Shown here in pieces: positions 3,935 through 64,000 of a DNA stretch of 64,000 bases (within the stretch, counting starts at the first letter, position 1; every line of letters begins with the position of its first letter). The translations under genes and the position numbers were made by a program. Origin of the DNA: Octopus sinensis. Its lineage: Eukaryota. The stretch spans positions 68,572,001 through 68,636,000 of the forward strand of contig NC_042998.1 of the NCBI RefSeq assembly GCF_006345805.1, in the 5' to 3' direction. Under the pieces are notes generated by a model that was given only the letters and a program-made list of their open reading frames with translations, did no database searches and was not told the origin of the DNA.

Positions 3935-4545
3935 CTCTTGTACTTGTTTCAGTCATTTAACTGCGGCCATGTACTTATTGTATCAGTTTCTTTTGCCGAA
4001 CCGCTATGTTACGGGGACGTAAACACACCAGCATCGGTTGTCAAGCGATGGTGGGGCAGAAATACAGACTCATAAACATATATAAACATTATCACTATGG
4101 ACTCCGTGTGGGCAGTCATCTAAAAGTTTTTGTTCGTCATGATGCTGACATAAGTTCCTTGTCTTTCCTGATGAGAAGGCGACATAATGCACCCTTTATT
4201 CCTTCGGAATTAGGAATATGCAGTCTTCGAAACATATGTCGAGAATAAAGAAATTTTGTTAAATCGTCGTTCAACTCCATTCTTTCATTTATATATATAT
4301 ATACACACACACATATATATACATAAATATATATACATATATATATATACATACATACATAGATACATACATATATATATATATGACGAGCTTCTTTCAG
4401 TTTCCGTCCACTAAATCCACTCACAAGGCTTTGGTTACCCCGAGGTTACAGTAGAAGACACTTGCCCAACGTGCCTTGCAATGGGACTGAACACAGAACA
4501 ATGTGGTTGGGAAGCAAGCTTCTTACCACACAACCTCGCCAGCGA
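3935..4545 (-). mobile_element. SINE-B, interrupted
   Basis: 3' half at 3935-4085 and head at 4385-4545, separated by unique sequence and (TA)n. Confidence 0.8.
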
Positions 4546-4569: not shown

Positions 4570-5500
4570 TTGCTATTGAGCACTTTTCCATCCAGCTCCT
4601 TCTTCGATCCCTTCACCACGTAGCATCTCTGACTGGCCCGAAGAAGGAGAAAACGTTTTCGAGGTGCGGCTATATTTCTGTTCTGTTTTTCTTTTGGTTT
4701 TTGTTTTGGGGCTAAATGATACTGTTGTTGTCACTGGTGATGGTAATGTCGTAGCACTTGAAGGCAGTATTTCCTCTGTTGCTTTTGTTGTTCATGCTTC
4801 CACTGTTGGTGTCGTTGTTGTTGCCGTCGTAGGTGCTTCTTCTGGGGCTGCAACCTCTGTTACTGCGATTGCGTACCGCTGCTGTTGCTGCTGCGATTGT
4901 TGGCACTTTGGATGCGATGCTGGTTCCAGTCGAGACCATTTTTCAGCTGTCACTTTTGTTGTTGAGATCAGAGGACCTTGAAGTAATCAATGTTCCACAG
5001 TTATGGCATTTAGGCCTTCTACTCTCCACTACCGCTTGCAGTCGCTGCTCCTCAGGAATCCCTGTTAGAGCCGGGACTGAACCCGGAACAGTATGACTGG
5101 GAAGTAAGCTTCTTACCACACAGCTACACCTACGCCTGGTATGTTTGCAATGTTTAACCTGATTGCTTTCGGTCCCAGTTAAATTGGATTCTTCACTTCT
5201 ATGCGGAATGGAGGAATGCATCTGAGCCAGGATGTCCGAGTGAAAGTTCGCTCGGATACAATCCTAATGGCTGATACTTGTAACAAAACCTATGTATTCT
5301 TAAATGATTTTTCAAGCTCGTTTCAGCTTGCTCGGGAGACTCGCATCAGTCTATGCCCCATCGTCGAGATCCATCTATATACCAACGTTCTATTTATTTG
5401 CTTCAGGATCTGCGGTAAATACAGTGAGTGTGATATTTCTACCGAGAATGTTTATGTGTCGCCCAACTTGTTCCCAATATCTAGGTACTGATGCTTTTTA
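4570..5500 (-). pseudogene. Possible non-LTR ORF1 (gag-like) remnant
   Basis: Minus-strand VVESRRPKCHNCG (knuckle start) followed by a T/P-rich low-complexity frame with a stop; interrupted by a SINE-B head at ~5070-5136. Confidence 0.35.
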
Positions 5501-8385: not shown

Positions 8386-8767
<382 letters not shown>

Positions 8768-9230
8768 GCCTTTGCACAGTTTCTAACGCTGGAGATGTAC
8801 TACGGTGTCAGCTGTTCACTACCAGTGAACTAAGGTAACACCTTTTATTTTTCGATCACCTTCCGGAGTATTCAAGCGCTTCCAAACAGTACTTTTTTCT
8901 GCAAGTGCTCCACCTTTATTGCAGCCCTTATTTGTTCCATGTATTTCTCGAGATTTTTGCTTACAGTTCCCAGGGCTCCAACAATTAATGGTACTACTGC
9001 TACCTTTTTCATCGACCACAAATGCTTAACTTCCCAAGCTAACCTGTCATATCTCTTGACATTCTTTCTTCCTTATCTCATATGTTGTTATCAGCTGGGC
9101 ATGCTATGTCTATGATCCAGCATAATTTTTCTTTCTCAATTAAGACTATGTCCAGCTTCCTATTCTCTATCTCATGGTTGCACTGAATCATAAAATCCCA
9201 TAGGATCTTTGATTTTCTCTATTCGACGAT
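8768..9230 (-). mobile_element. R4/Dong-clade LINE 3' fragment (RLE domain plus 3'UTR)
   Basis: Minus-strand ILWDFMIQCNHEIENRKLDIVLIEKE...VVPLIVGALGTVSKNLEKYM; both ends abut (TAA)n. Confidence 0.85.
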
Positions 9231-9244: not shown

Positions 9245-9809
9245 TGAGTGAGAGTGCAGCGCATGCGATCAAAGTGACACTGTGTTACAAATATACGAAG
9301 CCTAATATACCCATCATGACTACCCGTCTGATAAAGGTACACCAGGTACATGCATCACAACCATATGTGCGTGTCATGGTGATCTCATATCAAGATAAAC
9401 AGCACATGACCTTGGAGGTGGGGCCCAGTTAGAATTTTCTTCAGATCGAGGACCCCATCCTACTCAAAAGGTCCCTGAATAAAGGTTGTTTAAGGATGTT
9501 GAATGAATGAAACACTTGTTTCTAAAGGTGAATTATTCAAACCCCCAAAGAATTCCTCTCAACACATGGTTATGATGCCCCCCCCCCAATACTTCTGCTC
9601 GTGATCAGAGATGCACATATCGTCAGCCACTAAGGGAATTGCTCAACTGGTTAAGGTCAAACAACTGACAAGCAAATCTGTGGTATTGAGCAGAATATTT
9701 GCTGTCGCCCATCTTTTATACCAAGACAAAACAATGGTACATGGTAACACTTCCAATCAGTTAAGATCAAAAGGCATGAGCGCTACTGCCTGGTACTGCA
9801 TCAGGGCAT
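9245..9809 (-). mobile_element. Element E: ~560-nt non-coding repeat in (TAA)n, full length
   Basis: Plus strand tgagtgagag...tactgcatcagggcat, homologous to five other copies; TTA repeats on both sides. Confidence 0.9.
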
Positions 9810-9810: not shown

Positions 9811-9866
<56 letters not shown>

Positions 9867-9873
9867 CATTATT

Positions 9874-9908
<35 letters not shown>

Positions 9909-9927
9909 TATTATCATCATCATTAAT

Positions 9928-9965
<38 letters not shown>

Positions 9966-12250: not shown

Positions 12251-12384
12251 TTGCAGAAGTAGTCGTAGTATCATTAATATTATTGCTATTATTGCTAGTT
12301 AAGAACAATGATGATGATAATAATAATAATTATAAACCTATCATTGATACAAAAATATAAATAAAAAAAAAAGCAAAGAAGGCT

Positions 12385-13200
12385 TGCATGAATAAAATCG
12401 AAGACAGCAGGAAAGGTAAACTCCTGCATGGAAAATACCCTAACCGCCTGTCCAAGCCAGATATTTATCAAAGGCTAACACACCCATGGCTACAAGGGAC
12501 AGGTCTGAAAGGGGAAAAAGAAGGTTTTGTTATTGCAGCGCAACATCAGAGCTTGCCTACCAGAAACTACCATCTTTAAAGATGGATCTGGCCGCTCGTG
12601 CAGAATTTGCAGAAAATTCAGACATTTGATCATGTTGTTTCTAGCTACCAAGTTCTCGCTGAAAAGGGGTACCTCATAAGACATGTCAGGCTAGGGCAGT
12701 ACATCCACTGGAATGCTTGTAAATACTACAAAATTAAATCTCCTCTTTATCATTCCTAACGCACCAATTATTGCTGGTATTATCGTTTGTGATTTCTATT
12801 TGCAGATCTTTATAGTGAGAAACCTTTTCCTATTCCATTATTGAGACATTTTGATATTGTGGGACAGACATTTCTATTAACAGACAAGTTTCTCTGTTGT
12901 AGTCCTTGGTCACAATGTCCGGTCGATTGAGTCAATGTTTCTGTCTGTTTGTACTGGGAAGTTCCAAAAGATGTTGACGCCGTCGCCATTTACTACATCC
13001 TCTGAAAAAACCCTACCACATCCTTAGAAAAAAACCCTATCCATTTAAATATCTGTGTTGTATTACATGAAGATATTTCGCTACTGCCCTTGCCACTACC
13101 CACCCCAAACTTTCAGGTTATACTGGGACATCTCTTATCCTTCACTCGCCCTAGGACGCTGGGTGTGTCTTGGCATGTTATTATAACAAACATGCAGATT
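12385..13200 (+). mobile_element. R4/Dong-clade LINE 3' remnant with inverted middle segment
   Basis: Plus: LLHGKY..GLKGEKEGFVIAAQHQSLPTRNY..QYIHWNACKYY. Minus 13003-12742: EDVVNGDGVNIFWNFPVQTDR..CLLIEMSVP..IIGALGMIK. Plus 3'UTR ccctaggacgctgggtgtgtcttggc, then (TAA)n. Confidence 0.8.
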
Positions 13201-13201
13201 A

Positions 13202-13273
<72 letters not shown>

Positions 13274-13275
13274 TG

Positions 13276-13341
<66 letters not shown>

Positions 13342-13639
13342 GTGCTACTACTACTACTACTACTAATAATAATAATGATAATAATTCAAAAACAATTCAC
13401 TAAACTGCTCCCACGCCACTTGAATCAATAAATGAAATAAGTCAAGCAAATACAAATTCGTGTTGTAACAGTTTAAGAAGGCAATGAAGCTGTTTCTTAA
13501 AGAGCCAGATATAATTTCATCCGGAGCTTGATGTGGAAGATAAGGTGAACGGAGGAGGTAAAGTATTGGAAATGGATGGAGGTAATGAAATTCTGATTAA
13601 ATAATGTCGGAATAGCAACATAGCAGAGGCATCTTTTTG

Positions 13640-18266: not shown

Positions 18267-18775
18267 TCTTTACTCTCTTTTACTTGTTTCAGTCATTTGA
18301 CTGTGGCCATGCTGGAGCACCGCCTTTAGTCGAGCAAATCGACCCCGGGACTTATTCTTTGTAAGCCCAGTACTTATTCTATCGGTCTCTTTTTGCCGAA
18401 CCGCTAAGTGATGGGGACGTAAACACACCAGCATCGGTTGTCAAGCAATGTTAGTCAAACACCGACACACAAACACACAGAAGACACTTGCCCAAGATGC
18501 CACACAGTGGGACTGAACCCGGAACCATATGGTTGGTTAGCAAGCTACTTACCACACAGCCACTCCTGCGCCTATATATATATATATATATAATATATAT
18601 ACATATATATATATATTGTGTGTGTGTGTATGTGTGTTTGTGTTTGTACTCCACCACCGCTTGACAACCGGCGTTGTTTTGTTTATAGCCCCGTAACTTA
18701 ACGGATCAGCAAACGGGAACGAAGGTGGTGCTCCAGAATGGCCGCAGCCCAGTGACTGAAATACGCCAAAGATGA
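18125..18775. mobile_element. Cluster of three SINE-B pieces (+ head fragment, - near-complete, + 3' half)
   Basis: cttgggcaagtgtcttc at ~18147; minus copy 18265-18573; plus 3' half 18620-18775. Confidence 0.85.
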
Positions 18776-24664: not shown

Positions 24665-25584
24665 TATAATATATATATATATACGCGTGTGTAAGGCGTA
24701 CGGATCTTCTGTACTTTTTTGCACCTTTACGTAGTCACTCGACATGCTAGAAACTACAGCCAAATTCTTTTCGAAAATGGAAGAAACGATAGATAATGTA
24801 GTTCTTGAAGCACACAAACACACACACGCAAGGAAAAAAAAAACTGGATGATAGATCTGCTGCGATTCGTGTACCGTAGACAATAAAAACCGGATAGTCA
24901 CGGCAGGAATACTTAGAAAAAAATAATCTGCAATGTCCGAGGAATTGGTGATGACCTTTGTCGATATGATTTCTCATTAAAACGTGTTAATCAGGACAGG
25001 AAAGGCAGTATCTCTGACTCTTTACAGAGGTCTTTGTGACTGATTGGATGAAGCGAGGAAGTTATCCCCAACTTAGGAACCTGGTCTGAACCCTTGTAAA
25101 ACACAGAGGAACGTTGAAGACACCTAAAAGGACCTAATACTAGCAAACAGTATAAGATGCCACCGGTTTATCGTCCACTCTGACAATGGTATTTCATATA
25201 GTCTCCATCTACCAAAGTTCATTGAGAAGGTACTTGGTCGAACCTATACGATGGTAGAATATATTTGTCCAAGGTACCACAGTGTAAGTAGAGAATTATT
25301 AAGACAAAGAGAGAAAGACTAGAATTCCGACAGTTTTGGCCAAGTCATTTGTTCCCCAGAGAAAGAATAAAATGAGATATTTATAAAATTGCTACTTCGA
25401 ACCCCGCTGGGACCGGAGTTCCCTTCAGTGAAGAATGTTGTGATCTAGGTTTTTTTAAAGGCTGGTTATCTGGTGTCATGGACACCGGATAACCGACCTC
25501 AAGAGTGGTAGATCTCGAGAAAAGAATTACATAGACACACATGTATTTTAAGAATATGTAATCACGTTTATATGTGTATATATA

Positions 25585-26299
25585 GGCGCAGGAGTGGTTG
25601 TGTGGTAAGAAGCTTGCTTCCCAACCACATGGTTCCATGTTCAGTCCCACTGCGTGGCAACTTGGGCAAGTGTCTTCTATAGCCTCGGGCCGACCAAAAC
25701 CTTGTGAATTCATTTGGTAGACGGAAACTGAAAGAAGCCCGTCGTATGTATGTATATACGTGTGTGTGTATGTGTGTCTGTGTGTATAAACATTTATAAA
25801 TGATTATATAAATGTATGTGTATGTTACATAAAGCTTTTATCTTTTATCTGTTTCGGTCATTTGAATGTGGCTATGCTGGGGCCTTGAAGGGTTTTAGTC
25901 GAACAAACTGACCCCAGGACTTATTTTTGAAAGCCCAATACTTATTCTATTCGTCTCTTTGGCTGAACCGCTAGGTTACGGGGACACAAACACAGCGGCA
26001 CTAGTTATCAAGCAAGGGTGGAGGACAGACACAGACAGAAAGACACGCACACACACACACATACACGCGCGCGCGCACGAACATGTTTAGATCCACTTTA
26101 TTTTATTTTATTTATCTTTAATTTTTTTTGTGTATTTCTTTCAGTCTTAATTAGCGGTCATGCTGGGGCAGTGCCTTCAAAAATTTTTAGTCGAATGAAT
26201 CGATCCCAGTATTCATTATTTTTTATGTCTGCTATTTATTCTATCCGGACATCTAAGGTACGGGGACGTAAACACACCAGCACCGATTGTCACGCGATG

Positions 26300-33150: not shown

Positions 33151-36100
33151 GTTTCTTTATTAGCCCCACAGGCTGCACACAGATAGAACAAATACAAGGT
33201 AGAGCTTTTCTTTGAGGTAAAAAAATAAAATAAAAATAAAAATTAAAATTAAAAAAAAAGAGGGGGGTCGATCAAAAGGGATCGTAAAAGGAGAGAAAGA
33301 GGACAAAAAAGAGGGGGTTAAAAAAAAGGGGGAGAGGAAAAAATTGATCAAGGGATCGTTATCACAGAAATGTCAATATGAAGTGTAAAGGGAGGACAGG
33401 TGAGGTTTACCCGTGAAAGAAAAGCCTACGGAAAAGACCACGGTAACCTCGGTCAATGAAGTCACATGTTATATTTCTTTTTTTTTTTTTTTTTGCAAAT
33501 AAGCAACTCTCTGTATTAATTTTTACGTTTCATAGAATCATAGTCAAGGTGGCTTCGTCATTCATACGTGCATCCTTGCTACATTCACCCATCTTTTTTT
33601 CAAACATTCACTAGACAAAACTTGCCTCTCTACTCTCACTTTTTTCTTCAAGTGATACTTGAAGAAGTTTGATGAGAGATTGACCAGAGAGGAAAGTGTT
33701 TGTCTCTAATCCTTTCAGACGCGTCCACCAGATACATTCTTTCGCCATAGCCACAAGTATGATAAAAATAGCTCTTCCTTCCCGTTTGAAGGAAGGAGGC
33801 GTGACGATATTAACGATAGACTCGGCTGATAAACCGACACGTCCCACACGTGACAGCAGTCGTTCGACATAAGCCCACAGGTCGGAATTGCTGGACACTG
33901 CACGATTGCGTGCAGAGCGGTTTCGTCGCTCTGCCCGCATCTCGGCAGGTCGGCCCCGTGTGTCTCGAGCCATGCCTATAGAGCTTATCCCGAACGGGTA
34001 GCGCTTCTCGGTGGCACCGCCAGGCCAGGGATCTCTGGAAGTTTTCCATAGGTCCCGGGCCGAAAGTCGTTTGAAACAGGCGGGTCAGGTATTCCTCGTC
34101 GACGCCCAGTTTTGCCCCGAGCTCGTCGTCGTACCTCCCCTCCACTAATCCCCTATAGAATGCTTTGGTTGTGTTGAAGTCACTCAAGGTCGACCCGGGA
34201 CGGCAGAGTTGCTTGAGAGCAACGCGACACTCGCGGTGCCATTCGCCCTTCTTCGGCCTCTTTTTGATCCACGACTGTAGTTCGGTCATGGAGACGAGTT
34301 GCGGAATGCGTGCCTCACAAACGGCGACCACACACTGTTCACCGTCGTCTACATAGAGCCGGAGATGTCGCAGTCTCAGCGCGTGTCTGCGCATCATCAA
34401 CCACGGCATGCCCAGCCCTCCTTTTAACGGGGTTGACAGCAAATGGATCGCCTGACCATCGGGACGCATCCTTTCCACAAGAAGCGGAAGAGGATGCGTT
34501 TCTAGTTTGGTGATGGTAGGTCGGGACAAGGTACGACGGTCAGGCGGTAGTAGATGATTGACGCGATGTACGGCGTCACCACCTCCGCCCGACCTTTTAG
34601 GACAGTTTCCTCTCGGCCCATTGCTGGGCGAGAGTGACCACCCTACCCCCGTTATCTCGTTCCAGTTCTTCTCCATTTGGAGGTCCGGACCGAACCAGAC
34701 CCCGAGCAACTCAACCGGGCCGTCTGTCCAGCGTCCCACGACGGAGGTACTGGTGGACGGCATGGGCTTTGCTTCTCCAGGTGCCGAGCCGCAAGCCCAC
34801 TGACTTTTCCGGTTGATTTTTGCTCCTGTCACCGCTTCGTAGTCTTTCAGTGTCTCGCCGACCCGCTCGATGTGCTCGTGGCTGACACTATGACGGTGAC
34901 GTCGTCCGCGTATGCAGACACGCTCGTCCCGCATCCTAATTCTCGCGGGATGCCCCTCAGAGTCGCCAGCTCCGCAGTAGTGGCTCAAGAGTCAATACGT
35001 ATAGAAGCGCCGAGAGGGGGCATCCCTGACGGACCGAACGTGCAATGTCGAAGGGTCTCGATAGAATGTCCATTTACGCGAATTACCGAACGGATGCCTC
35101 TGTACAAGGCAGCTATCCAGCCGCGGAAGACGGGACCGAACCAGCCGCTCTCAGGACCGCCTCCAAGTATCGATGGTCTACTCTATCAAAGGCTTTCGAT
35201 TGATCCAAGTTGATCAGGGCCCCACCCATGCCGGTTCGTTAACTACCCTGTCTATGATGTAGCGCATCAATGGAGGTTGTCATGGATGCTCCGGCCCGGC
35301 ACGGCGCACGTTTGTGCGTTGTCCACCAGTTTTGTTGGCGTTGTCGACCATGACAAGCCCAACCTCTTGCTAACACCTTTGTCAAAATTTTCAGGTCTGC
35401 CATTGAGCAGAGTGATTGGCCTAAAGTTATCTATAATGTTTCCCTTGTTTGGATCTTTCTTCAGCAGAGTTACAGCTCCTCGACTCACAAAACCGGTATG
35501 CTCCCGTTTTGCTGCCAGTTGCAGTATACCGCTGCCAAGACGTCTCCCAAACAAGTCTGGCATACAATAGTAAACTCGTAGGGTAGACCATCCAAACCTG
35601 GTGATTTGTCCCTCGAGCATTCTGCCATCGCTTCCCCCGCACTTCCGCCGCCGTGATGGCACCTTCGCAGCACCCTGCCTTCTTGTCGAGAGTCGTGGCA
35701 GGCTATGTAGGTAGGCACTGAAGTCTACCCTACTTCTTGCCCTCCACTCGTCCCGAACAGTCGGGCAAAATGCTGCTGAAAGGCCTCACATATTTTACTT
35801 GGCTCGAGCAATTCGCGCCCCTGTTCATCTACCAGTGACCGAATGGTGGCTTTTTTGCCCTGTTGCGCCTCTGCCACCCGGCCTCTCTCGCGGCTCCACC
35901 CCTTCGTTCCTTAGAGCACGCATCCTATCTCTGACAGCACATCCTTCGTGTTTGGCGTTGAAGTGTTGGTCGAGGGCCAACCTCGCCGCCAAAACGTCGG
36001 ATGCGATGCCGCTTCTAATTGCCTCTTCTAGCTTCTTAACTAGCTCACCCTCTACTCTATTTTCTATCTATGGCTAGTGCTTTGCTGTACCTAATCGCTT

Positions 36101-36639
36101 CTGCTTTTACTGCTCTCTTGAGGGCAAACCACCATTTGTTGTTGATGATGGCTCCCGTCAAAGCCCTCTTTACTAGTGTGCTAATCCGGTCTCTGAAAAC
36201 TTGTCTGGACGGGAATGATGCGTTCAGTTTCCAGTACCCAGGACCCTGTCTCTGTGCCTTATCTAAGTCTAGCGTACACGTCACCAATTTGTGATCCGTG
36301 TAGCTGACTGTGTGGAATTGTGGACATCCTAAGTTATCCTTGTCTACTGTCCTACACAGTATCCTATCTAGATACGATCTCGACGACCCACTGCGGTTGC
36401 TCCATGTCCACGTTGGTGCATTTGGGTGGTCGAGTCGGTACCTGTCAGACAGTTGGAATCGTCTGAGCAGGTCTCTGAGGCATTTGCATCCCCTTCTGTT
36501 TCTGTCTCTACCCACGTAGTCTACATGCGTGTCCAAGGTAGCATTCCAATCCCCCACTAAGAGTAAAGGACGAGACGTTCCCAAGAATACTTCTAGACGT
36601 CGAAAGAAATCCGCCCGACCTGTTAAGGGCGGTGCGTAG

Positions 36640-39205: not shown

Positions 39206-40213
39206 TAAAAGGGAAGAAAAGAAAAAAAAATAAATAAAATAAAAAATAAAAAGAATAAAAAGAATAAAAAGAAAAAAAAGAAAAGGAAAAGGAACAAAAG
39301 AAAAGAGAAATGAAAAAAGAAGAAAAAAGGGGAAAAAAAGGGGAAGAGGAAAAAAAAACGATCAATAGGGATCGTGTATCACAGTGTTATGATATATGGT
39401 GTAAAGGGGAAAGCAAGTAAGGTTTATCCGTGGGAAGAAAAGCCTACGAAAAAGACCACGGTAACCTTGGTCAATATTGTTATATGTTACCACATTTGTT
39501 TGCAAGTGGGTAACCCTCTGTTTTCAATTTCTGGGTTCATAGGATTATGCTCAAGGTGGCTTCGTCATTCATACGTGCCATCCTTGCTACATTCACCCAT
39601 CTTTTTTTAAAACATTCGCTAGACAAAACTTGCCTCTCTACTCTCACTTTCCTTTTCAAGTGGTACTTGAAGAAGTTGATGAGAGATTGACCAGAGAGGA
39701 AAGTGTTTGTCTCCAATCCTTTCAGACGCGTCCACCAGATACATTCTTTCGCCATAGCCCCAAGGATGAGGAAAATAGCTCTTCCTTCCCGTTTGAAGGA
39801 AGGAGGCGTGACAATATTGACGATATACTCAGCTGATAAACCGACTCGTCCCACACGTGACAGCAGTTGTTCGACATAAGCCCACAGGTCGGAAATTGTT
39901 GGACACTGCACGAGTGCGTGCAGAACGGTTTCGTCGCTCTGACCGCATCTCGGGCAGGTCGGCCTCAGGTTTCTCGAGCCGTGTCTGTAGAGCTTATCCC
40001 GAACGGGTAGCGCTTCTCGGTAGCGCTGCCAGGCCAGGAATCTCTGGAAGTTGTCCATGGGCCCTGGCCCGAAAGTCGTCCTGAACAGGCGGGTCAGGTA
40101 CTCCTCGTCGACGTCCAGGTTCGCCCCGAGCTCGTCGTCGTACCGCCCCTCCACTAATCCCCTATAGAATGCTTTGGTTGTGTTGAAGTCACTCAAGGTC
40201 GACCCAGGACGGC

Positions 40214-40217
<4 letters not shown>
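39206..40217 (-). mobile_element. Tx1 LINE 3' fragment (~1 kb) in (GATA)n
   Basis: PTCPRCGQSDETVLHALVQCP...MNDEATLSIIL*; GATA arrays at 39140-39205 and 40215-40378. Confidence 0.95.
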
Positions 40218-40291
<74 letters not shown>

Positions 40292-40294
40292 TTG

Positions 40295-40378
<84 letters not shown>

Positions 40379-40587
40379 CACACAGACACACACACAAATG
40401 TGTTACCAATTCAAATATGCTTGTAGCATATTCGAACCAGTAAGAATGTCATTCACTGAATTTTGCCATAGGGAAAATTTCTCGCAGTAGATACATAGGT
40501 ATAAATACACCGAATCAGCTTACAGCGCCCCCTAACCAGAGTGGTCATCTCCTTGAACTTGTAACAAATTTGTACTTATATATATAG

Positions 40588-45226: not shown

Positions 45227-45389
45227 TATACATACATACGTATAGATATTGTGAGAAACTGTGAAGGTATGATGCTACAGTGAATAATGTTTTCACAGCT
45301 ATTGTGTAATTATTTCGGTATTATGCTGAAACGCGTGTATGCCCTATAAATTAAATACCATACCTGTTTTCTGATTATTACCATTATTA

Positions 45390-45457
<68 letters not shown>

Positions 45458-45497
45458 GTTGTTGTTGTTGTTGTTGTTGTTGTTATTATTATTATTA

Positions 45498-45590
<93 letters not shown>

Positions 45591-45591
<1 letters not shown>

Positions 45592-45872
45592 GAGTAGAGA
45601 GCAGTGCATGCCATCAACGTGACACTGGAGTAAAATATACGAAGCCCAGTATATCCATCATGACTACCCGTCTGATAAGGGTACACTAGGCACATGCATC
45701 ACAGCCATATGTGCGCGACATGGTGATCTCATATCAAGATAAACAGCACATAACCTTGCACGTGGGGCCCAGTTAGAATTTTCCTCTGGTCGAGTAACCC
45801 ATCCCGCTCAAAAGGTCCCTGAACAAGGGTTGTTTAAGGATGTTGAATGAAACACCCATGTTTCCTGAGGTG
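45591..45872 (-). mobile_element. Element E, truncated
   Basis: Retains the end at (TTA)n|tgagtagagagcag; lacks the other half. Confidence 0.9.
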
Positions 45873-46605
45873 AGTGAGTGGTGACCGCGTTCGTTTTGTG
45901 TTTCTAAATGTTTATCACATCGCAAGAAAAGTAGATGCATAAATCGAAAAAAAAGTTGATACATAAATACAAACATACATTGTTAGATTAGAACCGGGAG
46001 AATGGAGGGACGCGGAGGAGGTGAAAGAGAAAGAGAGAACGTGAGAGCGACAATAGATACATAGATCCAAAGAAAAGTTGATACGTAAATACGTAGACAC
46101 AGCAATATTAGATTTCACTTTCACTTTTCATTACCACACGAGGATAAAATTAACTCGTAAGTGGCTGAATACAGATGCATATCATTAACGTAGTTCTCAG
46201 GGAGATTCAGCCTCTCACAGAATATGACAAGGCTGGCCCCTTTGAATTACAGCTACAACTCATTTTGGCTAGCTGAGTGGACTCGAGCAGGATAGAGCAA
46301 GTGGTTGGAAGAAAACGAAAAAGATCTTATATAGGAACAGGAAAATCTTTTTAGTCGTTAGGGTCACTGTGGGCGTTAATTAGGTCCTAACAGCGGTATT
46401 TGTAAGTCTCACAGATCTGGAAGTCATGCCCCCAGATAAACACCGATGCACACGCTGTTGTTATCAAACTGAGCGTGAGTCGAGGGCGAATAGATGACGG
46501 AATAGCAATTATTTTGTCTTAGCTTTCACTTCTTATACTAAACACAAGATATTTTTGCCTTATGATATGAAACATTTCCTTTTCTTTCATTCATTTTTTT
46601 AAAAA

Positions 46606-46922
46606 TGACACTCCGTCGGTTACAACTACGAGGTTCCTGTGATCAACGGAACAGTCTGCTGGCAAAATTAACGCGCAAGTGGCTGAGTACTCCACAGATA
46701 TGCATACCATAACGTAGTTTTCAGGGAGATTCAACTTCACACAGAATGTGACAAGGCTGGCTCCTTTGAATTTCAGCTACAACTCATTTTTGCCAGCTAA
46801 ATGGACTGCAGCAAGATGAAGAAGAGTACCTTGCTCAAAACCGCAGCGCGCCGCAGGGTATCGTACTCATGACCATACGATCAGAGACCGAATACCCCTA
46901 CCCACTGATCCATGCACCTTCA
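46606..46922 (-). mobile_element. SINE family D (a further partial copy lies at ~46135-46295)
   Basis: gacactccgtcggttacaac...ttgctcaaaac...catgcacctt. Confidence 0.85.
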
Positions 46923-47439
46923 CTCTCTTAACCGTAGAGAAAAGGAGTGAAGCAATAGAAACAGAGAAAGAAAAGCCTCAGTCATTTATGATTACAAATA
47001 GACTGAAATACGATCAATCTTTTCTCGCTTCTTTACTTTTAACAATGGAGAAGAGGGAAAGACATTTAGTAATGAATAGAGGGAAAGTCTTTTAGGTGTT
47101 TATGCTTTTATTCTGTGAGTTTTAGAATGATCACGCGTTATTTCTCTCTTCTTTCCCCCAACCCGGTACTTATTCGCATTCTTTCATAGTTCTTCATGTC
47201 TTTTAATTGAGGTGGAGGTAGGGAGAAGATCATGTTTTTTTTCAGGCACGTTTAAAGTTTTCTCTACAAACTACAAACAAGCCCCCCCCACCAATGCTTT
47301 TTTTGTCATACAAAAACTAATGCAAATTTCGAACGGGGTATAGCTGTGAAAAGAGCCCAGAAAATTAAGTAATACCCCTTACAAAATAGGTGGGGGAGAA
47401 AATTTGCCAACAGGTGGCTACTCGAGATTCAACTCTATA

Positions 47440-47540
47440 CTTTAAAGAATGTCTTCTACTATAGCCTCGAGCCGACCAAAGTCTCATGAGTGAATTTGGT
47501 AGACGAAAACTGAATGAAGCCCGTCACATATGTGTGTAAG

Positions 47541-47599
<59 letters not shown>

Positions 47600-47822
47600 A
47601 GTATGTGTGTGTGTTTGTGTCTCTATTTGTCCCCTTCAACCATTATTTGACAACTGATGCTGGTGTGTTTGCGTCCTCATAACTTAGCTGTTCGGCAGAA
47701 GAGGCTGATAGAATAAGCACCAGGCTTACAGGGAATAAGTCCAGGGGTCGATTTCTTCGACTAAAGGGCGGTGCTCCAGCATGGCCACCGTCAAAAGACT
47801 GAAGCAAGTAAAAGAATTAAAG
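47440..47822 (+). mobile_element. SINE-B, 5'-clipped
   Basis: gtcttctactatagcctcgagccgacc, (GT)n, tail gtgctccagcatggcc...taaaagaa. Confidence 0.85.
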
Positions 47823-48095
47823 AATACCAGAACATTATGTACCACTAAATCAAGATGGTTCTTTGTATATGTATGATGTATTTTAAGGTTAAATAGTAAT
47901 ACCGTTTACGTTTGCGTAACTGAGATATTTTGGTTGGATTATATAATTATCGGTTTTACACTTCTTTCTATATTCTGTAACTGTCACAATATAGAAACAT
48001 TTCTCATGGCACCAGCACACAATTTACAGATGCTTACATTTTTTAATGTTTTCCGTGAACTTTTCACGGGTCCAGCTAGTGATTATTACTATTAC

Positions 48096-48176
<81 letters not shown>

Positions 48177-48177
<1 letters not shown>

Positions 48178-48320
48178 GAGTGAGAGAGCAGTACATGCCA
48201 TCAAAGTGACACTGGGGTAAAATATATGAAGTTCAGTATACCCATCATGATTACCCGTCTGATAAGGATACACAAGGAACATGCATCACAACCATATGTG
48301 CGCGACATGGTTATCTCATA
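48177..48320 (-). mobile_element. Element E, short truncated copy flanked by (TTA)n on both sides
   Basis: tgagtgagagagcagtac...ttatctcata|ttattattatt. Confidence 0.9.
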
Positions 48321-48416
48321 TTATTATTATTGTTGTTGTTGTTGTTGTTGTTGTTATCATTTTATGTTTTACTTTTGCTTTACATTTGTACAAGTTGGCT
48401 CGAATAATAAAATAAA

Positions 48417-48465: not shown

Positions 48466-48530
48466 TAATAATAATAATAATAATAATAATTATTATATAT
48501 TATTATTATTTTATTATTATTATTATTATT

Positions 48531-50464
48531 ACGTTTTTTTTCTTCTTTCAAATTTCTTCCATTTCTTGCCGAGTGTCTTCCCGACTCCTAGGGCAAAGAA
48601 AAACTCATAGTGTATATTGGTAGGCCATTAAACCAAACTCAGTAGTTCGTTCATTTTTTTTTTTTTTTTTTTTTTAAAGTTAAATTTAAATACATGAGCA
48701 GCAACAGTTCTCACATCGACAATGCTCTTCTCAATACGTGGATGTACCAGTTAAGACAATCTTTTGCACTTCTTGCAGGGATGGTAAGCCAGGGATCATT
48801 CTCATATAATTTTCGGTTCCCTTCTTGATCATTCCTAGTGCTCCTACGATCACTGGTATTGTAACCGCCTTGAGATGCCACATTTTCTCAATTTCAATGA
48901 GTAGGTCTTTATATTTTCTGAGCTTGTCAAACTCTTTCGCTGAGATATTATGATCACAGGGGATGCTCATGTCGATCAATAAGCAAACTTTATTGTTTTG
49001 GTCTTTCACAACAATATCTGGTTTATTGGCCTTGATGGTTCGGTCTGTATGTACTGGAAAGTCCCACAGAATGGTTACATTTTCTCCTTCAGTTACAGCC
49101 TCAGGGTGGTGATTATACCACTTGTCGGCAGTTTTGATATTGTAATGCCGGCTTATTAGCCAGTGGAGATATTGGCCAACTCTGTCATGTCTTAATTTAT
49201 ACTCCACTGGTGCTAAGACTTTACATCCAGAGATTAGGTGGTCCACTGTTTCAATCATGTCGTTGCAGAATCGGCATTTTGGGTCTGCTCCATTTTTCAT
49301 CACATTGGCCTGGTAGTTCCGGGTTAATAGGCTTTGGTCTTGACAGCCAGGATGAAACCTTCGCTCTCTGCTTTTAGCCCTGAGCTCCGCAGCCACTGAT
49401 GGGTTTGCTTCTGGTCAACATCAGCTTGTTTGCTGCGGGTCACATATTTGCCGTGCAGAGGTTTCTCCTCCCACCTATCAGCCAATTGCTCGTGCGCTTT
49501 TTTCATTGCCATGATTTTCACCCTTTTTTGCAACAATAGTTGCCGTACTTCCTCGGGTTGTTCAGTTTGGGTATCCTGCACGAGATCAATAGCAAATTTT
49601 TTGCTTTCCTTGATGATAGAATGAAGCTTCTTTCGTCTCTCGTGATTTTCCACGAGCTTTAGCATCCAGTCATTCGATATTTCGAGATATTTGGCCAGTC
49701 CAATTGTGGTTGTTTTGTAAGCTAGTTCAAATTGGATCAGGCCTCGACCTCCTTGGGCTCTGGGAAGGTAAAGGCGATCTACGTCTGCCTTTGGGTGGTG
49801 CATCCTATTACAACTCAGCAGCTTGCGTATTTTTCTATCTATATTCTTTACTTCACTCATACTCCAGTTCAACACATTGTAGCTATAAGTAACAACTGGA
49901 ACTGCTAAGGAATTTATAGCTAACACCTTGTTACGTGCATTTAGTTCAGATTTCAGGACTGCACGAACTCTCCTATAACATTCCTTCCTGATTTTCTCTT
50001 TCATGCTTGCATGCTGAATACCAGAGCCTTCATTTATCCCTAAATATTTGTATGTTGTTCTTGCTCAAGCTCTCTTATGACTGTGTCAACATCTAACACG
50101 ACTGAATTTGTGGTCTTCACTTTCCCTTTCTGGAAAGTGGCCTTGGCACACTTCTCAAGTCCAAACTCCATCCCGATGTCATCGCTGAATGCTTTCACGG
50201 TGCGCAATAGGCCTTCAAGTTCATTATTGTCTTTACCATAAAGTTTTAAGTCATCCATATAAAATAGATGGCTTATTTTTTTATTGGCAATTTTATACCC
50301 ATACCCTGTTCTGTTTAATTCACTTGTAAGGGGTATTAGGGCTATGCAGAATATTAAAGGTGAAAGTGAGTCACCTTGAAAAATTCCACAGTTGATGTTT
50401 ATATTTTCTGAGGCAAGTACTCCATTAGAGTGGTATAATTTGAGATTCGTATTCCACAACGACA

Positions 50465-50465
<1 letters not shown>
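48531..50465 (-). mobile_element. R4/Dong-clade LINE, 5'-truncated (RT C-half, CCHC, RLE), two frameshifts
   Basis: GIFQGDSLSPL, HLFYMDDLKLY, CRFC..DHLISGC, RHD, WDF..NKPDIVV..LIDMSIP..KYKDL; (TAA)n at both junctions. Confidence 0.96.
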
Positions 50466-50917: not shown

Positions 50918-50991
<74 letters not shown>

Positions 50992-50992
50992 T

Positions 50993-51358
50993 TATGTTTA
51001 CTTTTGCTTTACATTTGTACAAGTTGGCTCGAAGTCTCACCCAGAGACCACAAGAGACAACAAGTTGGAAGTTATGCCTAAGGTGCCATATATTTGGTTT
51101 TGTACATAGTGTTGTTTCAGAGAATGTTTAAGAAACCATGAGAAAATTATGTTTGTTTTAAAATTTGAGATCACATAGAAAAGTATTTTGCGTAGGATAT
51201 GAGCAGTTCCCATGAGCACTATCTTTTGAAAGTCTGCCATTTTGGGGTTTCCTGGTATCTGAGCTAGGTAGCAAACAGCCCCTTTTGCTATCATCCCCAG
51301 GGCACCTATGACAACAGGTATTGTTTTAGTCTTCAGGTTCCATATTTTGCTAATTTCT
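50993..51358 (-). mobile_element. Dong-like 3' fragment (copy A)
   Basis: IEISKIWNLKTKTIPVVIGALGMIAKG..KIVLMGTAHILRKI plus 3'UTR; TAA flanks. Confidence 0.92.
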
Positions 51359-51491: not shown

Positions 51492-52047
51492 TGAGTGAGA
51501 GAGCAGTGCATGCCATCAAAGTGACACTGGGGTAAAAATATACGAAGCCCAGTATACCCATTATGACTACCCGTCTGATAAGGGTACACCAGGCACATGC
51601 ATCACAACCATATGTGCGCGGCATGGTAATCATAGCAAGATAAACAGCGCATGACCTTGCAGGTAAGGCCCAGTTAGAATTTTCTTCTGTTCGAGTAGCC
51701 CATGCTGCTCAAAAGGTCCTTGAATAAGGATTGTTTAAGGATTTTGCACGAACTACCCATGTTTCCAAAGGTGAATTATCCAAATCTCCAAGAATTTCTT
51801 TCAACACATGGCTATGATGCTCCCCCACAACTTCTGCTCGTGATCAGAGATGCACATATTGTCAGCCACTAAGGAACATGCTCAACTGGTTAAGGTCAAA
51901 CAACTGACCAGCAAATCAGTGGTATTGAGCAGAATATTTGCTGTAGCCCATCTTTTATACCAAGACAGAACAATGTACATGATAACACTTCCAATCAGTT
52001 TAGATCAGAAGCCATGAGAGCCACTGTCTGGTACTGCATCCGGGCAT
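51492..52047 (-). mobile_element. Element E, full length
   Basis: Collinear with 9245-9809. Confidence 0.92.
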
Positions 52048-52148
52048 TTATTATTATTGTTGTTGTGTTGTTGTTGTTGTTGTTCTTCTTCTTCTTCTTC
52101 TTCTTATTATTATTATTATTATTATTATTATTGTTGTTGTTATTATTG

Positions 52149-52198
<50 letters not shown>

Positions 52199-52202
52199 GT
52201 TG

Positions 52203-52247
<45 letters not shown>

Positions 52248-52267
52248 TATTATTATTATTATTATTA

Positions 52268-52308
<41 letters not shown>

Positions 52309-52322
52309 TTATTATTATTATT

Positions 52323-52717
52323 CTGTTTGACTTTTGCTTTATATTTGTACAAGTTGGCTCCAAGTTTCACCCAGAGACCTCAAGAGAACAGGGTTGGAAG
52401 TTCATGTTGTTGTTATGCCTAGTGTGCCATATATTTGGGGGGTGGGGATGTTGTACTAATGAATGTCTAAAAAAAAAGTTTTGTTTTTTTTTTTTTTAAA
52501 CCGAAAATTATGTTTGTTTTAAACCTTGAGATTACATAGAGAGTATTTTGCGTAGGATATGAGCAGTTCCCATGAGCACTATCTTTTGAAAGTCTGCCAT
52601 TTTGGGGTTTCCTGGTATCTGAGCTAGGTAGCAAACAGCCCCTTTTGCTATCATCCCCAGGGCACCTATGACAACAGGTATTGTTTTAGTCTTCAGGTTC
52701 CATATTTTGCTAATTTC

Positions 52718-52853: not shown

Positions 52854-53409
52854 TGAGTGAGAGAGCAGTGCATGCCATCAAAGTGACACTGGGGTAAAAA
52901 TATACGAAGCCCAGTATACCCATTATGACTACCCGTCTGATAAGGGTACACCAGGCACATGCATCACAACCATATGTGCGCGGCATGGTAATCATAGCAA
53001 GATAAACAGCGCATGACCTTGCAGGTAAGGCCCAGTTAGAATTTTCTTCTGTTCGAGTAGCCCATGCTGCTCAAAAGGTCCTTGAATAAGGATTGTTTAA
53101 GGATTTTGCACGAACTACCCATGTTTCCAAAGGTGAATTATCCAAATCTCCAAGAATTTCTTTCAACACATGGCTATGATGCTCCCCCACAACTTCTGCT
53201 CGTGATCAGAGATGCACATATTGTCAGCCACTAAGGAACATGCTCAACTGGTTAAGGTCAAACAACTGACCAGCAAATCAGTGGTATTGAGCAGAATATT
53301 TGCTGTAGCCCATCTTTTATACCAAGACAGAACAATGTACATGATAACACTTCCAATCAGTTTAGATCAGAAGCCATGAGAGCCACTGTCTGGTACTGCA
53401 TCCGGGCAT
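52854..53409 (-). mobile_element. Element E, duplicate of 51492-52047
   Basis: Shares private variants (ggtaatcatagcaag, gcaggtaagg, tccaaatctccaag). Confidence 0.92.
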
Positions 53410-53684
53410 TTATTATTATTGTGTTGTGGTTGTGTTGTTGTTGTTGTTGTTCTTCTTCTTCTCTCTCTCTTCTTCTTCTTATTATTATTATTATTATTAT
53501 TATTGTTGTGTTATTATTGTTGTTATATTATTATTATATATTTTATATTATTATTTATTATTATTGTTGTTGTTATTAGTATTATATTATTATTATTATT
53601 TATTATTATTATTACTATTATTATTATTATTATTATATTATATTATATTATTATATTATTATTATTATTCTTATTATTATTATT

Positions 53685-54270
53685 CTGTTTGACTTTTGCT
53701 TTATATTTGTACAAGTTGGCTCCAAGTTTCACCCAGAGACCTCAAGAGACAACAGGGTTGAAGTTCATGTTGTTGTTATGCCTAGTGTGCCATATATTTG
53801 GGGGGTGGGGATGTTGTACTAATGAATGTCTAAAAAAAAAGTTTTTTTTTTTTTTTTTTTTAAACCGAAAATTATGTTTGTTTTAAACCTTGAGATTACT
53901 AGAGAGTATTTTGCGTAGGATATGAGCAGTTCCCATGAGCAACTATCTTTTGAACTTCTGCCATTTTTGGGTTTCCTGGTATCTGAGTTAGGTAGCTATC
54001 AGCCCCTTTTGCTATCATTCCCAGGGCACCTATGACAACAGGTATTGTTTTGTCTTCAGCTTCCACATTTTGCTGATTCTATTCAGATCTTTATATTTGC
54101 TCAGTTTTTGGTAGGTCTTGACAGATACGTTTATATCGATTGGGACAGTCATATCATGAGGAGGCATGTTCTTTGTTTGAAGTCTTTCAATATGATGTCT
54201 GGCCTATTTGCATCTATCTTCCTGTCAGTTTGAATGGTGAAGTTCCAGAGGAGTGAGATGTGGAGTGAGA
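53685..54270 (-). mobile_element. Dong-like 3' fragment (copy B, longer RLE part)
   Basis: LWNFTIQTDRK..RPDII(L)KDFKQRTCLL.. with frameshifts; TAA flanks. Confidence 0.88.
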
Positions 54271-63370: not shown

Positions 63371-63446
<76 letters not shown>

Positions 63447-63465
63447 TTATTATTATTATTATCAT

Positions 63466-64000
63466 TGAGTGAGAGAGCAGTGCATGCCATCAAAGTGACA
63501 CTGGGGTAAAATATACGAATCCCAGTATACCCATCATGACTACCCGTCTGATAAGGGTACACCAGGCACATGCATCACAACCATATGTGCGTGACATGGT
63601 GATCTCTATCAAGATAAACAGCGCATGACCTAGCAGATAAGGCCCAGTTAAAAGTTTCTTCTGGTCGAGTAGCCCATCCCGCTCAAAAGGTCCCTGAATA
63701 AGGATTGTTTAGGGATGTTGAACGAACCACCCATGGTGAATTATTCAAACCCCAAAGAATTCCTCTCAACACATGGCTATGATGCTCCCCCACTACTTTT
63801 ACTCGTGATCAGAGATGGACATATCGTCAGCCACTAAAGGCCATGCTCAACTGGTTAAGGTCAAACAACTGACAAGCAAATCTCTGGTATTGAGCAGAAT
63901 ATTTGCTGTAGCCCATCTTTTATACCAAGACAAAACAATGTTCATGAAAACACTTCCAATCAGTTAAGATCGATCGAAAGCCATGAGAGCCACTGTCTGG
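63466..64000 (-). mobile_element. Element E, runs off the window
   Basis: (att)n atcat|tgagtgagagagcagtgcatgcc...gagagccactgtctgg. Confidence 0.92.

What the first reader, a model, noticed from the sequence alone, without database searches (positions are those of the whole stretch)
9245..9809. Element E: a ~560-nt non-coding, head-less retroposon confined to (TAA)n arrays
Seen: six copies (9245, 45591, 48177, 51492, 52854, 63466; five independent). All lie in the same orientation relative to the array and share one fixed end (...gcactgctctctcactca then (ATA)n on the minus strand). Two copies are truncated at the opposite end, and the 48177 copy rejoins (TTA)n with microhomology. Independent full copies share the other boundary, atgccc(t/g)gatgcagtacc. 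I see no long ORF, no tRNA A/B boxes and no TIRs. Four copies lie in the same TAA arrays as R4/Dong fragments. Established: one-sided truncation is a TPRT signature, and Dong/Rex6-type RLE elements target TAA repeats. Inference: a non-autonomous partner of an R4/Dong LINE, analogous to R2 SIDEs. Its 3' end does not visibly match the Dong 3'UTRs present here, so the partner is unidentified.
Basis: partly seen in the sequence, partly recalled or inferred. Interest (0 to 1): 0.75.

Follow-up and report, generated by a model that had tools for sequence, protein, structure and literature searches.

The report
Octopus TAA-repeat-specific non-coding retroposon
A roughly 557-base non-coding mobile element in an octopus genome is found only in TAA microsatellites and always in one orientation, like the Dong-type jumping genes beside it, so it is most likely a passenger copied by their machinery: an interesting but fairly ordinary kind of genomic parasite.

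Summary
The window (octopod DNA) holds six copies of a ~557-nt non-coding repeat. Five are independent. The sixth comes from unequal recombination between two flanking Dong-like LINE fragments.

All copies are sense on the minus strand and end at the same base (...CTCTCTCACTCA) followed by (ATA)n. Two are 5'-truncated, to 283 and 145 nt. Full copies share the 5' boundary ATGCCC(T/G)GATGCAGTACC, which also abuts TAA repeats. An Octopus bimaculoides gene model shows the same boundary.

There is no ORF, no Rfam family, no tRNA-like head, no TIRs and no similarity to Dong proteins. The sense RNA folds better than shuffled controls (z -2.2 to -3.8); the antisense does not.

Six restriction-like-endonuclease (R2-superfamily) LINE fragments of at least five 3'-tail types lie in the window's TAA arrays, most of them alongside E. 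They have the same polarity and the same junction type.

Best reading: a non-autonomous, TAA-specific retroposon inserted by target-primed reverse transcription (TPRT), using a Dong-like LINE's enzymes.

The R2-SIDE analogy fails on both defining features. No HDV-like 5' ribozyme was found, and E has no 3' identity to any LINE tail present. The partner remains unidentified, and no genome-wide test was possible.

The parts
9245..9809 (-). E copy 1, full length (565 nt). The 5' end ATGCCCTGATGCAGTACC is at 9809 and the 3' end ...CTCTCACTCA is at 9245.
45591..45873 (-). E copy 2, 5'-truncated to the last 283 nt. The 3' end abuts a 218-bp (TTA)n array. The 5' junction abuts non-TAA DNA, with TCAC microhomology.
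48177..48321 (-). E copy 3, 5'-truncated to the last 145 nt. The 5' junction joins AATAATAATA with 2-4 nt of microhomology. A 49-nt LINE-c tail fragment lies just upstream.
51492..52047 (-). E copy 4, full length (556 nt).
52854..53409 (-). E copy 5, 100% identical to copy 4. It was produced by unequal recombination between LINE-c and LINE-d, not by a new insertion.
63466..64000 (-). E copy 6, cut by the window end (535 nt visible; about the first 16 nt missing).
9811..9929 (-). (TAA)n array (reads ATT on the + strand) directly upstream of the 5' end of copy 1. It continues as (GAT)n to about 10258.
45374..45590 (-). (TAA)n array directly downstream of the 3' end of copy 2.
48082..48176 (-). 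(TAA)n array directly downstream of the 3' end of copy 3.
52104..52322 (-). (TAA)n array upstream of copy 4. It is separated from the element by (AAG)n/(AAC)n variants and a final AATAATAATAA.
63371..63465 (-). (TAA)n array directly downstream of the 3' end of copy 6. It ends in ordinary DNA.
8767..9229 (-). LINE-b: a 5'-truncated restriction-like-endonuclease LINE fragment (C-terminus ...VVPLIVGALGTVSKNLEKYMEQI...). Its 3' end ...GTGCAAAGGCA abuts (ATA)n. It lies 15 nt downstream of E copy 1.
48530..50465 (-). LINE-a: a 5'-truncated LINE running from RT motifs through the CCHC knuckle and KPD..D..K nuclease, with frameshifts. Its 3' end ...AAAACGTA abuts (ATA)n.
50991..51357 (-). LINE-c: the C-terminal and 3'UTR fragment of a Dong-like family that is 82-90% identical to O. 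bimaculoides proteins. It lies downstream of E copy 4.
52322..52717 (-). LINE-c': a chimera with the ORF part identical to LINE-c and the 3'UTR part near-identical to LINE-d. It marks the recombination that duplicated E.
53684..54270 (-). LINE-d: a 5'-truncated fragment of the same family as LINE-c, upstream of E copy 5.
48356..48404 (-). A 49-nt 3'-terminal fragment of the LINE-c family, upstream of E copy 3.
12340..13199 (+). LINE-e: a Dong-like fragment on the + strand ending at the window's large + strand (TAA)n array (13200-13385). It shows that element polarity follows array polarity.

Best explanation
E is a non-autonomous, non-coding non-LTR retroposon of an octopus genome that integrates specifically into (TAA)n microsatellites.

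Proposed cycle:
1. An E RNA corresponding to the window's minus strand is made. It is about 557 nt, has a defined 5' end and carries a (UAA)n 3' tail.
2. The reverse transcriptase and restriction-like endonuclease of a TAA-specific Dong/R4-type LINE nick one strand of a TAA array.
3. The nick primes reverse transcription from the RNA's 3' end (TPRT).
4. Copying either reaches the 5' end, giving full copies with the shared ATGCCC boundary, or stops early. In that case the cDNA joins the upstream DNA by microhomology, giving the 283-nt and 145-nt copies.
5. Each insertion leaves TAA repeats on both sides, which are targets for the next insertion. This explains the same-orientation chains of E and LINE fragments.

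Shown: the copy anatomy, polarity, target and truncation pattern; the presence and nature of the LINEs; and the strand-specific RNA structure.

Inferred: trans-mobilisation, the identity of the enzyme donor, and how E RNA is transcribed. No promoter was identified. Pol III is unlikely because there is no A/B-box head and the sense strand has T4-5 runs.
For: - Copies: six, five of them independent, all ending at the same 3' base followed by ATAATAA.
- Truncation: the two truncated copies both lack the 5' side.
- 5' boundary: two independent full copies in the window share it to the base, next to TAA repeats. A different copy inside O. bimaculoides protein A0A0L8HEN8 reads ...WYCIWA then FIIIIIII, which is the antisense of the same boundary plus (TTA)n.
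- Array orientation: five of five independent E copies and six of six Dong-like LINE fragments have the orientation dictated by array polarity. This includes the one + strand LINE, at the large + strand (TAA)n array.
- LINE junctions: the LINE fragments show the same junction form, unique sequence-A|ATAATAA.
- LINE identity: LINE-a aligns to solved R2 proteins across the RT, CCHC and nuclease regions.
- Published target: (TAA)n is the Dong target in insects, molluscs and cnidarians (PMC7998251; PMC3812793).
- Octopus context: Dong-R4 is among the most recently active LINE groups in O. vulgaris, with 1,129 recently active insertions (PMC13282606).
- Non-coding: E has no ORF and no similarity to 228 Dong-like proteins.
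- RNA structure: the sense RNA of three full copies and of the consensus folds better than dinucleotide shuffles (z -2.15, -3.8, -3.48, -3.83). The antisense does not (z -0.7 to -0.9).
- Age: independent copies differ by JC 0.08-0.14. That is about 0.04-0.07 from a common source, close to the SINE/LINE expansion at JC 0.065 reported for O. vulgaris.
Against: - No LINE 3' tail in the window (five different ones) shares sequence or an obvious terminal hairpin with E.
- No partner, and no LINE 5' end, could be examined.
- The sample is five independent copies in one 64-kb window plus two protein-level traces. No genome-wide census was possible.
- Target-site duplications cannot be read inside a microsatellite.
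- One truncated copy (45591) has ordinary DNA, not TAA, at its 5' junction.
- No promoter or 5'-processing ribozyme was found, so the origin of the precise 5' end is unexplained.
- There are no compensatory changes among the five copies to support any specific RNA structure.
Confidence: 0.72

Rival explanations
1. E is not a separate element. It is the long 3'UTR, or a 5'-truncated 'tail-only' master copy, of a Dong-like LINE family that happens not to be represented in this window.
For: - A related TAA-tailed LINE from an ENA assembly has a 3'UTR of about 580 nt, the same size as E.
- Dong-like families here each have a different 3'UTR, so an unseen family could carry E.
Against: - Three independent copies (two in the window, one in O. 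bimaculoides) stop at exactly the same 5' base, next to TAA repeats. Random 5' truncation of a 4-5 kb LINE would not do this.
- No copy extends into coding sequence.
- E has no similarity to Dong proteins at its 5' end.
- A tail-only master copy would still make E a non-autonomous family in practice.
Confidence: 0.1
2. E carries its own (TAA)n tail and is mobilised by an AP-endonuclease LINE with a TAA tail (I-factor or RTE style). Its insertion into TAA arrays would reflect tail-target annealing rather than a TAA-specific nuclease.
For: - Downstream TAA repeats alone could be an element-borne tail.
- Copy 63466's array ends in ordinary DNA.
- Copy 45591 has a non-TAA 5' flank.
- An AP-endonuclease LINE is present in the window at 33.6-36.6 kb.
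Against: - Three of four visible 5' junctions in the window, plus the O. bimaculoides copy, abut TAA repeats directly.
- The AP-endonuclease LINE here is not TAA-tailed and shares nothing with E.
- All TAA-embedded LINEs in the window carry the restriction-like nuclease.
Confidence: 0.07
3. The copies arose by local DNA-level duplication (unequal crossing-over, satellite-like amplification within TAA-rich DNA), not by retrotransposition.
For: One copy pair demonstrably arose this way. Copies 51492 and 52854 are 100% identical and lie between a chimeric LINE-c/LINE-d recombinant.
Against: - The other five copies differ by 8-13%.
- They have different neighbours.
- They have different truncation points, always on the same side.
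- They are spread over 54 kb.
- A further copy exists at another locus in O. bimaculoides.
Confidence: 0.05
4. E is a solo LTR or another transposon class (Helitron, Penelope-type retrozyme, TIR element).
For: If the first A is assigned to the array, E reads TG...CA, the usual LTR termini.
Against: - Truncation is one-sided and the orientation relative to TAA polarity is fixed.
- The termini are not inverted.
- No gag-pol lies between any pair of copies. The only RT between copies is R2-like.
- There is no TC...CTRR pattern with a 3' hairpin.
- Rfam finds no hammerhead or other ribozyme.
Confidence: 0.03

Closest known systems
Dong (Bombyx mori) and Dong-like R4-clade LINEs, including DongBg of the snail Biomphalaria
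   Same: - Inserts in (TAA)n in one orientation.
- Has a fixed 3' end followed by TAA repeats and shows 5' truncation.
- Sits in chains within TAA arrays.
- Dong-like fragments with identical junctions lie next to E (PMC7998251, PMC3812793).
   Different: - E encodes nothing and shares no sequence with the Dong-like elements present.
- Bombyx Dong has an HDV-like ribozyme cleaving exactly at the TAA/element junction (PMC3774820). None was detected in E.
R2 SIDEs (short internally deleted elements of Drosophila R2)
   Same: Short non-coding parasites of a site-specific LINE with a restriction-like endonuclease. They occupy the same target site as the LINE, in the same orientation.
   Different: - SIDEs are defined by the parent's 5' ribozyme plus identity to its 3'UTR (PMC3774820). 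E shows neither.
- E carries no remnant of an internal deletion of a LINE.
SINEs mobilised by 'stringent' LINEs through a shared 3' tail (for example UnaSINE1/UnaL2; from general knowledge)
   Same: Non-autonomous, a few hundred nucleotides long, inserted by TPRT, with a microsatellite-like 3' repeat.
   Different: - E has no tRNA, 5S, 7SL or snRNA head.
- T4-5 runs in the sense strand argue against pol III.
- No LINE-derived tail is recognisable.
- It has strict microsatellite target specificity.
'Unclassified SINE' and 'Unknown' repeat families in octopus repeat libraries (O. vulgaris annotation, PMC13282606)
   Same: The same genus. That study reports 893 recently active unclassified SINE families, and an expansion age (JC about 0.065) that matches E's divergence. 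E is probably already present as an unnamed consensus in such libraries.
   Different: No paper in the searchable library describes a TAA-specific non-autonomous element or links one to Dong. I could not check the libraries themselves.

Membership tests
Non-LTR retroposon inserted by TPRT | Constant 3' end with variable truncation only at the 5' end | tested here: met
   All six copies end at ...CTCACTCA. The two short copies (283 and 145 nt) lack the 5' side.
Non-LTR retroposon inserted by TPRT | Target-site duplication or deletion at the insertion | not testable with these tools
   Both flanks are TAA repeats, so any duplication is invisible.
Non-LTR retroposon inserted by TPRT | 3' repeat tail | tested here: met
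   Every copy is followed directly by ATAATAA..., from 15 nt to 218 nt.
Dong/R4-dependent (TAA)n-specific element | TAA repeats on both sides of full-length copies | tested here: met
   Copies 9245 and 51492, the truncated 48177 and the O. bimaculoides copy all meet this. The exception is truncated copy 45591.
Dong/R4-dependent (TAA)n-specific element | Fixed orientation relative to TAA polarity, as for the LINEs | tested here: met
   5/5 independent E copies and 6/6 LINE fragments, including the + strand LINE at the large + strand array.
Dong/R4-dependent (TAA)n-specific element | 3' region shared with the mobilising LINE | tested here: not met
   No similarity to the five LINE tails in the window. 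The true partner may lie elsewhere in the genome, which could not be searched.
Dong/R4 clade (for the neighbouring LINE fragments) | RT followed by a CCHC knuckle and a C-terminal restriction-like endonuclease; (TAA)n target | tested here: met
   - Alignment to R2 proteins 9nl2, 9nl3 and 9dou through RT, CCHC and KPD..D..K.
- 3' ends abut (TAA)n.
- Placement within the R4 clade by phylogeny was not done.
R2-type SIDE | HDV-like self-cleaving ribozyme at the 5' end | tested here: not met
   - No Rfam ribozyme model matched at E <= 10.
- My own nested double-pseudoknot descriptor found nothing starting at the boundary.
- The first 102 nt are predicted to form one long hairpin domain instead.
- A cleavage assay would be decisive.
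R2-type SIDE | Derived from the parent LINE by internal deletion (5' and 3' ends identical to the LINE) | tested here: inconclusive
   There are no coding remnants and no 3' identity to the LINEs present. No LINE 5' end was available for comparison.
SINE | Pol III promoter head derived from tRNA, 5S, 7SL or snRNA | tested here: not met
   - ARAGORN found no tRNA.
- Rfam found nothing at the gathering threshold or at E <= 10.
- T4-5 runs occur in the sense strand.
Solo LTR | TG...CA termini, either orientation, truncation on either side, paired copies around gag-pol | tested here: not met
   TG...CA is formally possible if the boundary is shifted by 1 nt. However, orientation and truncation are one-sided, and no gag-pol lies between copies.
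Helitron | 5' TC, 3' CTRR preceded by a hairpin, insertion between A and T | tested here: not met
   The termini are ATGCCC... and ...CACTCA on one strand, and TGAGTG... and ...GGGCAT on the other.

The most novel reading that the evidence does not exclude
E may be the first described non-autonomous parasite of a Dong/R4-clade microsatellite-specific LINE. It would be mobilised without the two features thought necessary for such parasites: a 5' self-cleaving ribozyme and identity to the LINE's 3'UTR. The enzyme would then recognise little more than a (UAA)n tail, perhaps with an RNA fold, and copy it into TAA repeats. This would imply relaxed template choice in a site-specific LINE with a restriction-like endonuclease.
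Probability: 0.22. Interest if true: 0.55.

Novelty: new member of a known kind. Interest (0 to 1): 0.38.

Why it matters
If the reading holds, TAA microsatellites in octopus genomes host a small community: several Dong-like LINE families plus at least one non-coding passenger. Each insertion renews the target for the next.

This helps explain part of the large 'unclassified SINE/unknown' fraction of cephalopod repeats. It also explains why TAA arrays there are broken into chains of same-orientation fragments.

The window also shows these fragments acting as substrates for unequal recombination that duplicates the DNA between them.

For enzymology, a passenger with no visible similarity to its driver would bear on how R2-superfamily reverse transcriptases choose templates. 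That question is of current interest for site-specific gene insertion.

It is not a new kind of element, and a repeat library probably already holds its consensus unnamed.

Tried and rejected
- **Exact-pattern scans.** Two conserved E 24-mers gave 0 hits in JGI metagenome contigs. One of them gave 0 hits in GTDB genome contigs and the other gave 0 hits in IMG/VR.
- **Fetching octopus DNA.** The O. bimaculoides proteins that contain E or LINE-c (P0121, P0123) and a window ORF are not on record with contigs.
- **Penaeus indicus locus.** A locus with a related LINE holds no E.
- **ENA loci.** Three loci with a related LINE hold no E, but they confirm the TAA tail and a 3'UTR of about 580 nt.
- **Transcriptome k-mers.** A search of the stored part of the O. 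vulgaris transcriptome supplement (Petrosino 2022) gave 0 hits.
- **Rfam.** No family matched at the gathering threshold on the whole window or at E <= 10 on E.
- **HDV-like ribozyme descriptor.** Only weak, off-boundary matches.
- **Covariation.** There were no compensatory pairs among the five copies, as expected for young neutral copies.
- **Coding remnants.** blastx of the E consensus against 228 Dong-like proteins gave nothing. The only matches were the two E-derived proteins P0121 and P0122, which were in the same file.
- **Low-stringency blastn.** E against the window gave nothing beyond its own copies.
- **3' end folds.** The last 100 nt of E and of the five LINE tails show no shared motif and no significant structure.
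- **First guess at the organism.** I suspected a penaeid shrimp from microsatellite richness and LINE hits. I dropped this once E-derived peptides matched Octopus bimaculoides and LINE-c matched O. bimaculoides proteins at 82-90%.

Full report
**What is there.** blastn of the reported copy against the window finds six copies, all in the same orientation. They are 9245-9809 (565 nt), 45591-45873 (283 nt), 48177-48321 (145 nt), 51492-52047 (556 nt), 52854-53409 and 63466-64000. The last is cut by the window end.

Read on the minus strand, every copy ends ...GCACTGCTCTCTCACTCA and is followed at once by ATAATAA.... The two short copies lack the other side. Full copies begin ATGCCC(T/G)GATGCAGTACC directly after TAA-type repeats. 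Independent copies are 87-92% identical, JC 0.08-0.14. TAA-type arrays occupy only about 3% of the window, so the association is not chance.

**One pair is a DNA-level duplication.** Copies 51492 and 52854 are 100% identical. The alignment of 50900-52340 with 52240-53700 is perfect, apart from microsatellite length, from inside a LINE ORF through E. The LINE fragment between them (52322-52717) is a chimera. Its ORF part equals LINE-c (50991-51357) and its 3'UTR part is nearly identical to LINE-d (53684-54270). The switch falls in a shared stretch. That is the signature of unequal homologous recombination between two same-orientation LINE fragments.

**Organism.** A search with peptides translated from the E consensus returned two proteins. 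One is Octopus bimaculoides A0A0L8HEN8. It contains the antisense of the E 5' half, ends ...WYCIWA and continues FIIIIIII, which is the same 5' boundary followed by (TTA)n. tblastn shows it is not any of the window's copies. It therefore counts as a further independent full-length copy with the same boundary.

The LINE-c/d family is 82-90% identical to several O. bimaculoides proteins. The window is therefore octopod DNA. The exact species was not determined.

**What E is not.**
- It has no ORF longer than 66 aa within the element. The consensus has stops in all six frames.
- blastx against 228 Dong-like proteins finds nothing.
- ARAGORN finds no tRNA-like sequence in the window.
- Rfam finds no family at the gathering threshold in the window, and none at E <= 10 in E other than low-complexity noise.
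- The termini are not inverted repeats and do not fit Helitron ends.
- There is no gag-pol between any pair of copies. The only reverse transcriptase between them is R2-like.
- The sense strand has T4-5 runs, which is weak evidence against pol III transcription.

**The neighbours.** tblastx with the largest LINE fragment (48530-50465) finds further fragments at 8767-9229, 50991-51357, 52322-52717, 53684-54270 and 12340-13199. There is also a 49-nt tail at 48356-48404.

The conceptual protein of LINE-a aligns to solved R2 retrotransposon proteins (9nl2, 9nl3, 9dou). The alignment runs from the RT through the CCHC knuckle, and weakly through the KPD...D...K nuclease. Every fragment is 5'-truncated and ends with unique sequence followed by ATAATAA, as E does. 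The single + strand fragment ends at the window's large + strand (TAA)n array. Polarity therefore follows the array for six of six LINE fragments and five of five E copies.

(TAA)n is the published target of Dong in insects, molluscs and cnidarians (PMC7998251; PMC3812793). Dong-R4 is among the most recently active LINE groups in O. vulgaris (PMC13282606). A related LINE fetched from an ENA assembly also ends in (TAA)n, after a 3'UTR of about 580 nt.

**Strand-specific RNA structure.** The consensus folded as sense RNA gives -193 kcal/mol against -166 +/- 7 for shuffles (z -3.83). The antisense gives z -0.93. Three real full copies behave the same way: sense z -2.15, -3.8 and -3.48, antisense -0.7 to -0.8. 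The 283-nt truncated copy shows no excess, so the signal comes from the 5' half or from long-range pairing.

The first 102 nt are predicted to form one long hairpin domain closed by nt 3-6 with 99-102, in both independent full copies. This independently marks the minus strand as the RNA strand, in agreement with the truncation polarity. The five copies show no compensatory changes, so no particular helix is proven.

**Mechanism.** The best-supported account is TPRT into TAA arrays using the enzymes of a Dong-like LINE.
- Shown: a discrete unit with a defined 5' end, a fixed 3' end, 5' truncation, TAA on both sides, a single polarity, and restriction-like-endonuclease LINEs with identical junctions in the same arrays.
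- Inferred: that those LINEs (or a relative) supply the enzymes, and how E RNA is made.
- The chains seen at 48-54 kb run LINE-d, E, LINE-c', E, LINE-c, a Helitron-like insert, LINE-a, a LINE-c tail and E. All but the Helitron-like insert are TAA-targeted elements, and all lie in one orientation. They are what successive insertions into one another's TAA tails would produce.

R2 SIDEs are defined by the parent's 5' HDV-like ribozyme and by identity to its 3'UTR. Bombyx Dong itself has such a ribozyme, cleaving exactly at the TAA/element junction (PMC3774820).

In E, no Rfam ribozyme model matches. My own nested double-pseudoknot descriptor finds nothing starting at the boundary. None of the five LINE tails in the window resembles the E tail in sequence or in an obvious terminal hairpin. 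The partner may be a family not present here. I could not reach octopus genomic DNA to look. The stored part of the O. vulgaris transcriptome supplement had no E k-mers.

**Rivals.**
- Plain LINE 3'UTR. A 3'UTR of about 560 nt is plausible for this clade. However, three independent copies stopping at the same base beside TAA repeats argue for a discrete unit.
- Mobilisation by an AP-endonuclease LINE with a TAA tail. This does not explain the TAA repeats at the 5' junctions.
- Local duplication. This explains only the one identical pair.
- Solo LTR. TG...CA is formally possible with a 1-nt shift of the boundary. The one-sided truncation and fixed polarity contradict it.

**Novelty.** The element is a non-autonomous non-LTR retroposon, a known kind. 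I found no description of a Dong-associated or TAA-specific non-autonomous element in the searchable literature. Octopus repeat libraries list hundreds of unclassified SINE families of matching age and probably contain it unnamed.

I rate it a new member of a known kind, of moderate interest. The more novel possibility is that it is mobilised without 3'UTR identity or a ribozyme.

Noticed in passing
window 50900-53700: A tandem duplication of about 1.36 kb, made by unequal homologous recombination between two Dong-like fragments. LINE-c' (52322-52717) is a chimera of the LINE-c ORF and the LINE-d 3'UTR. The duplicated E copies are 100% identical. This is either very recent or an assembly artefact.
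   Followed up: yes
window 12340-13199: A Dong-like LINE on the + strand whose nuclease-coding segment (about 12742-13002) is inverted relative to the rest of the element. The 3'UTR then resumes on the + strand and ends at (TAA)n 13200-13385.
   Followed up: partly
window 50548-50917 (minus strand): A roughly 370-bp non-coding insert between two TAA arrays, with an internal repeat of about 100 bp. Its 3' end is CCCGAGCAACGCCGGGCGATACTGCTAG|T. A GC hairpin followed by CTAG, and a 5' end of A|TC..., look like a short non-autonomous Helitron rather than a TPRT element.
   Followed up: no
window 54310-54992 (minus strand): A roughly 680-bp single-copy non-coding segment lying between two same-polarity TAA arrays. 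It ends ...GAATACGAACCAA|ATAATAAT. It could be another TAA-targeted passenger or simply the original DNA between arrays.
   Followed up: no
window 48403-48531: Downstream of LINE-a the array switches polarity, from (ATA)n to (ATT)n on the same strand. This is an inverted TAA/TTA junction.
   Followed up: no
window 33600-36600 and 39537-40409 (minus strand): A GC-rich (56%) AP-endonuclease LINE, with Exo_endo_phos and zf-RVT Pfam hits, plus a second partial copy of its 3' part. It is not TAA-tailed and is unrelated to E.
   Followed up: partly
window 45874-48081; also 2164-2259, 4449-4535, 5078-5143, 18478-18573, 25581-25679, 62404-62511: An abundant octopus SINE-like repeat. A tRNA-like head with A- and B-box-like motifs lies near 46.9 kb. 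The same repeat forms the C-terminal part of the O. bimaculoides gene model A0A0L8HEN8.
   Followed up: no
window 55478-56208: A 730-bp (GGTT)n array. The whole window is unusually rich in tri- and tetranucleotide microsatellites (68 TRF rows).
   Followed up: no
proteins P0122 and P0125 (external): P0122 (metaclust) starts with the antisense of the E 3' part fused to real-looking coding sequence, so an E fragment is exonised or mis-annotated in some cephalopod transcript. P0125 is labelled 'hypothetical protein, Escherichia coli' in UniRef but is 85% identical to the octopus LINE-c nuclease domain, which suggests contamination of that record.
   Followed up: no
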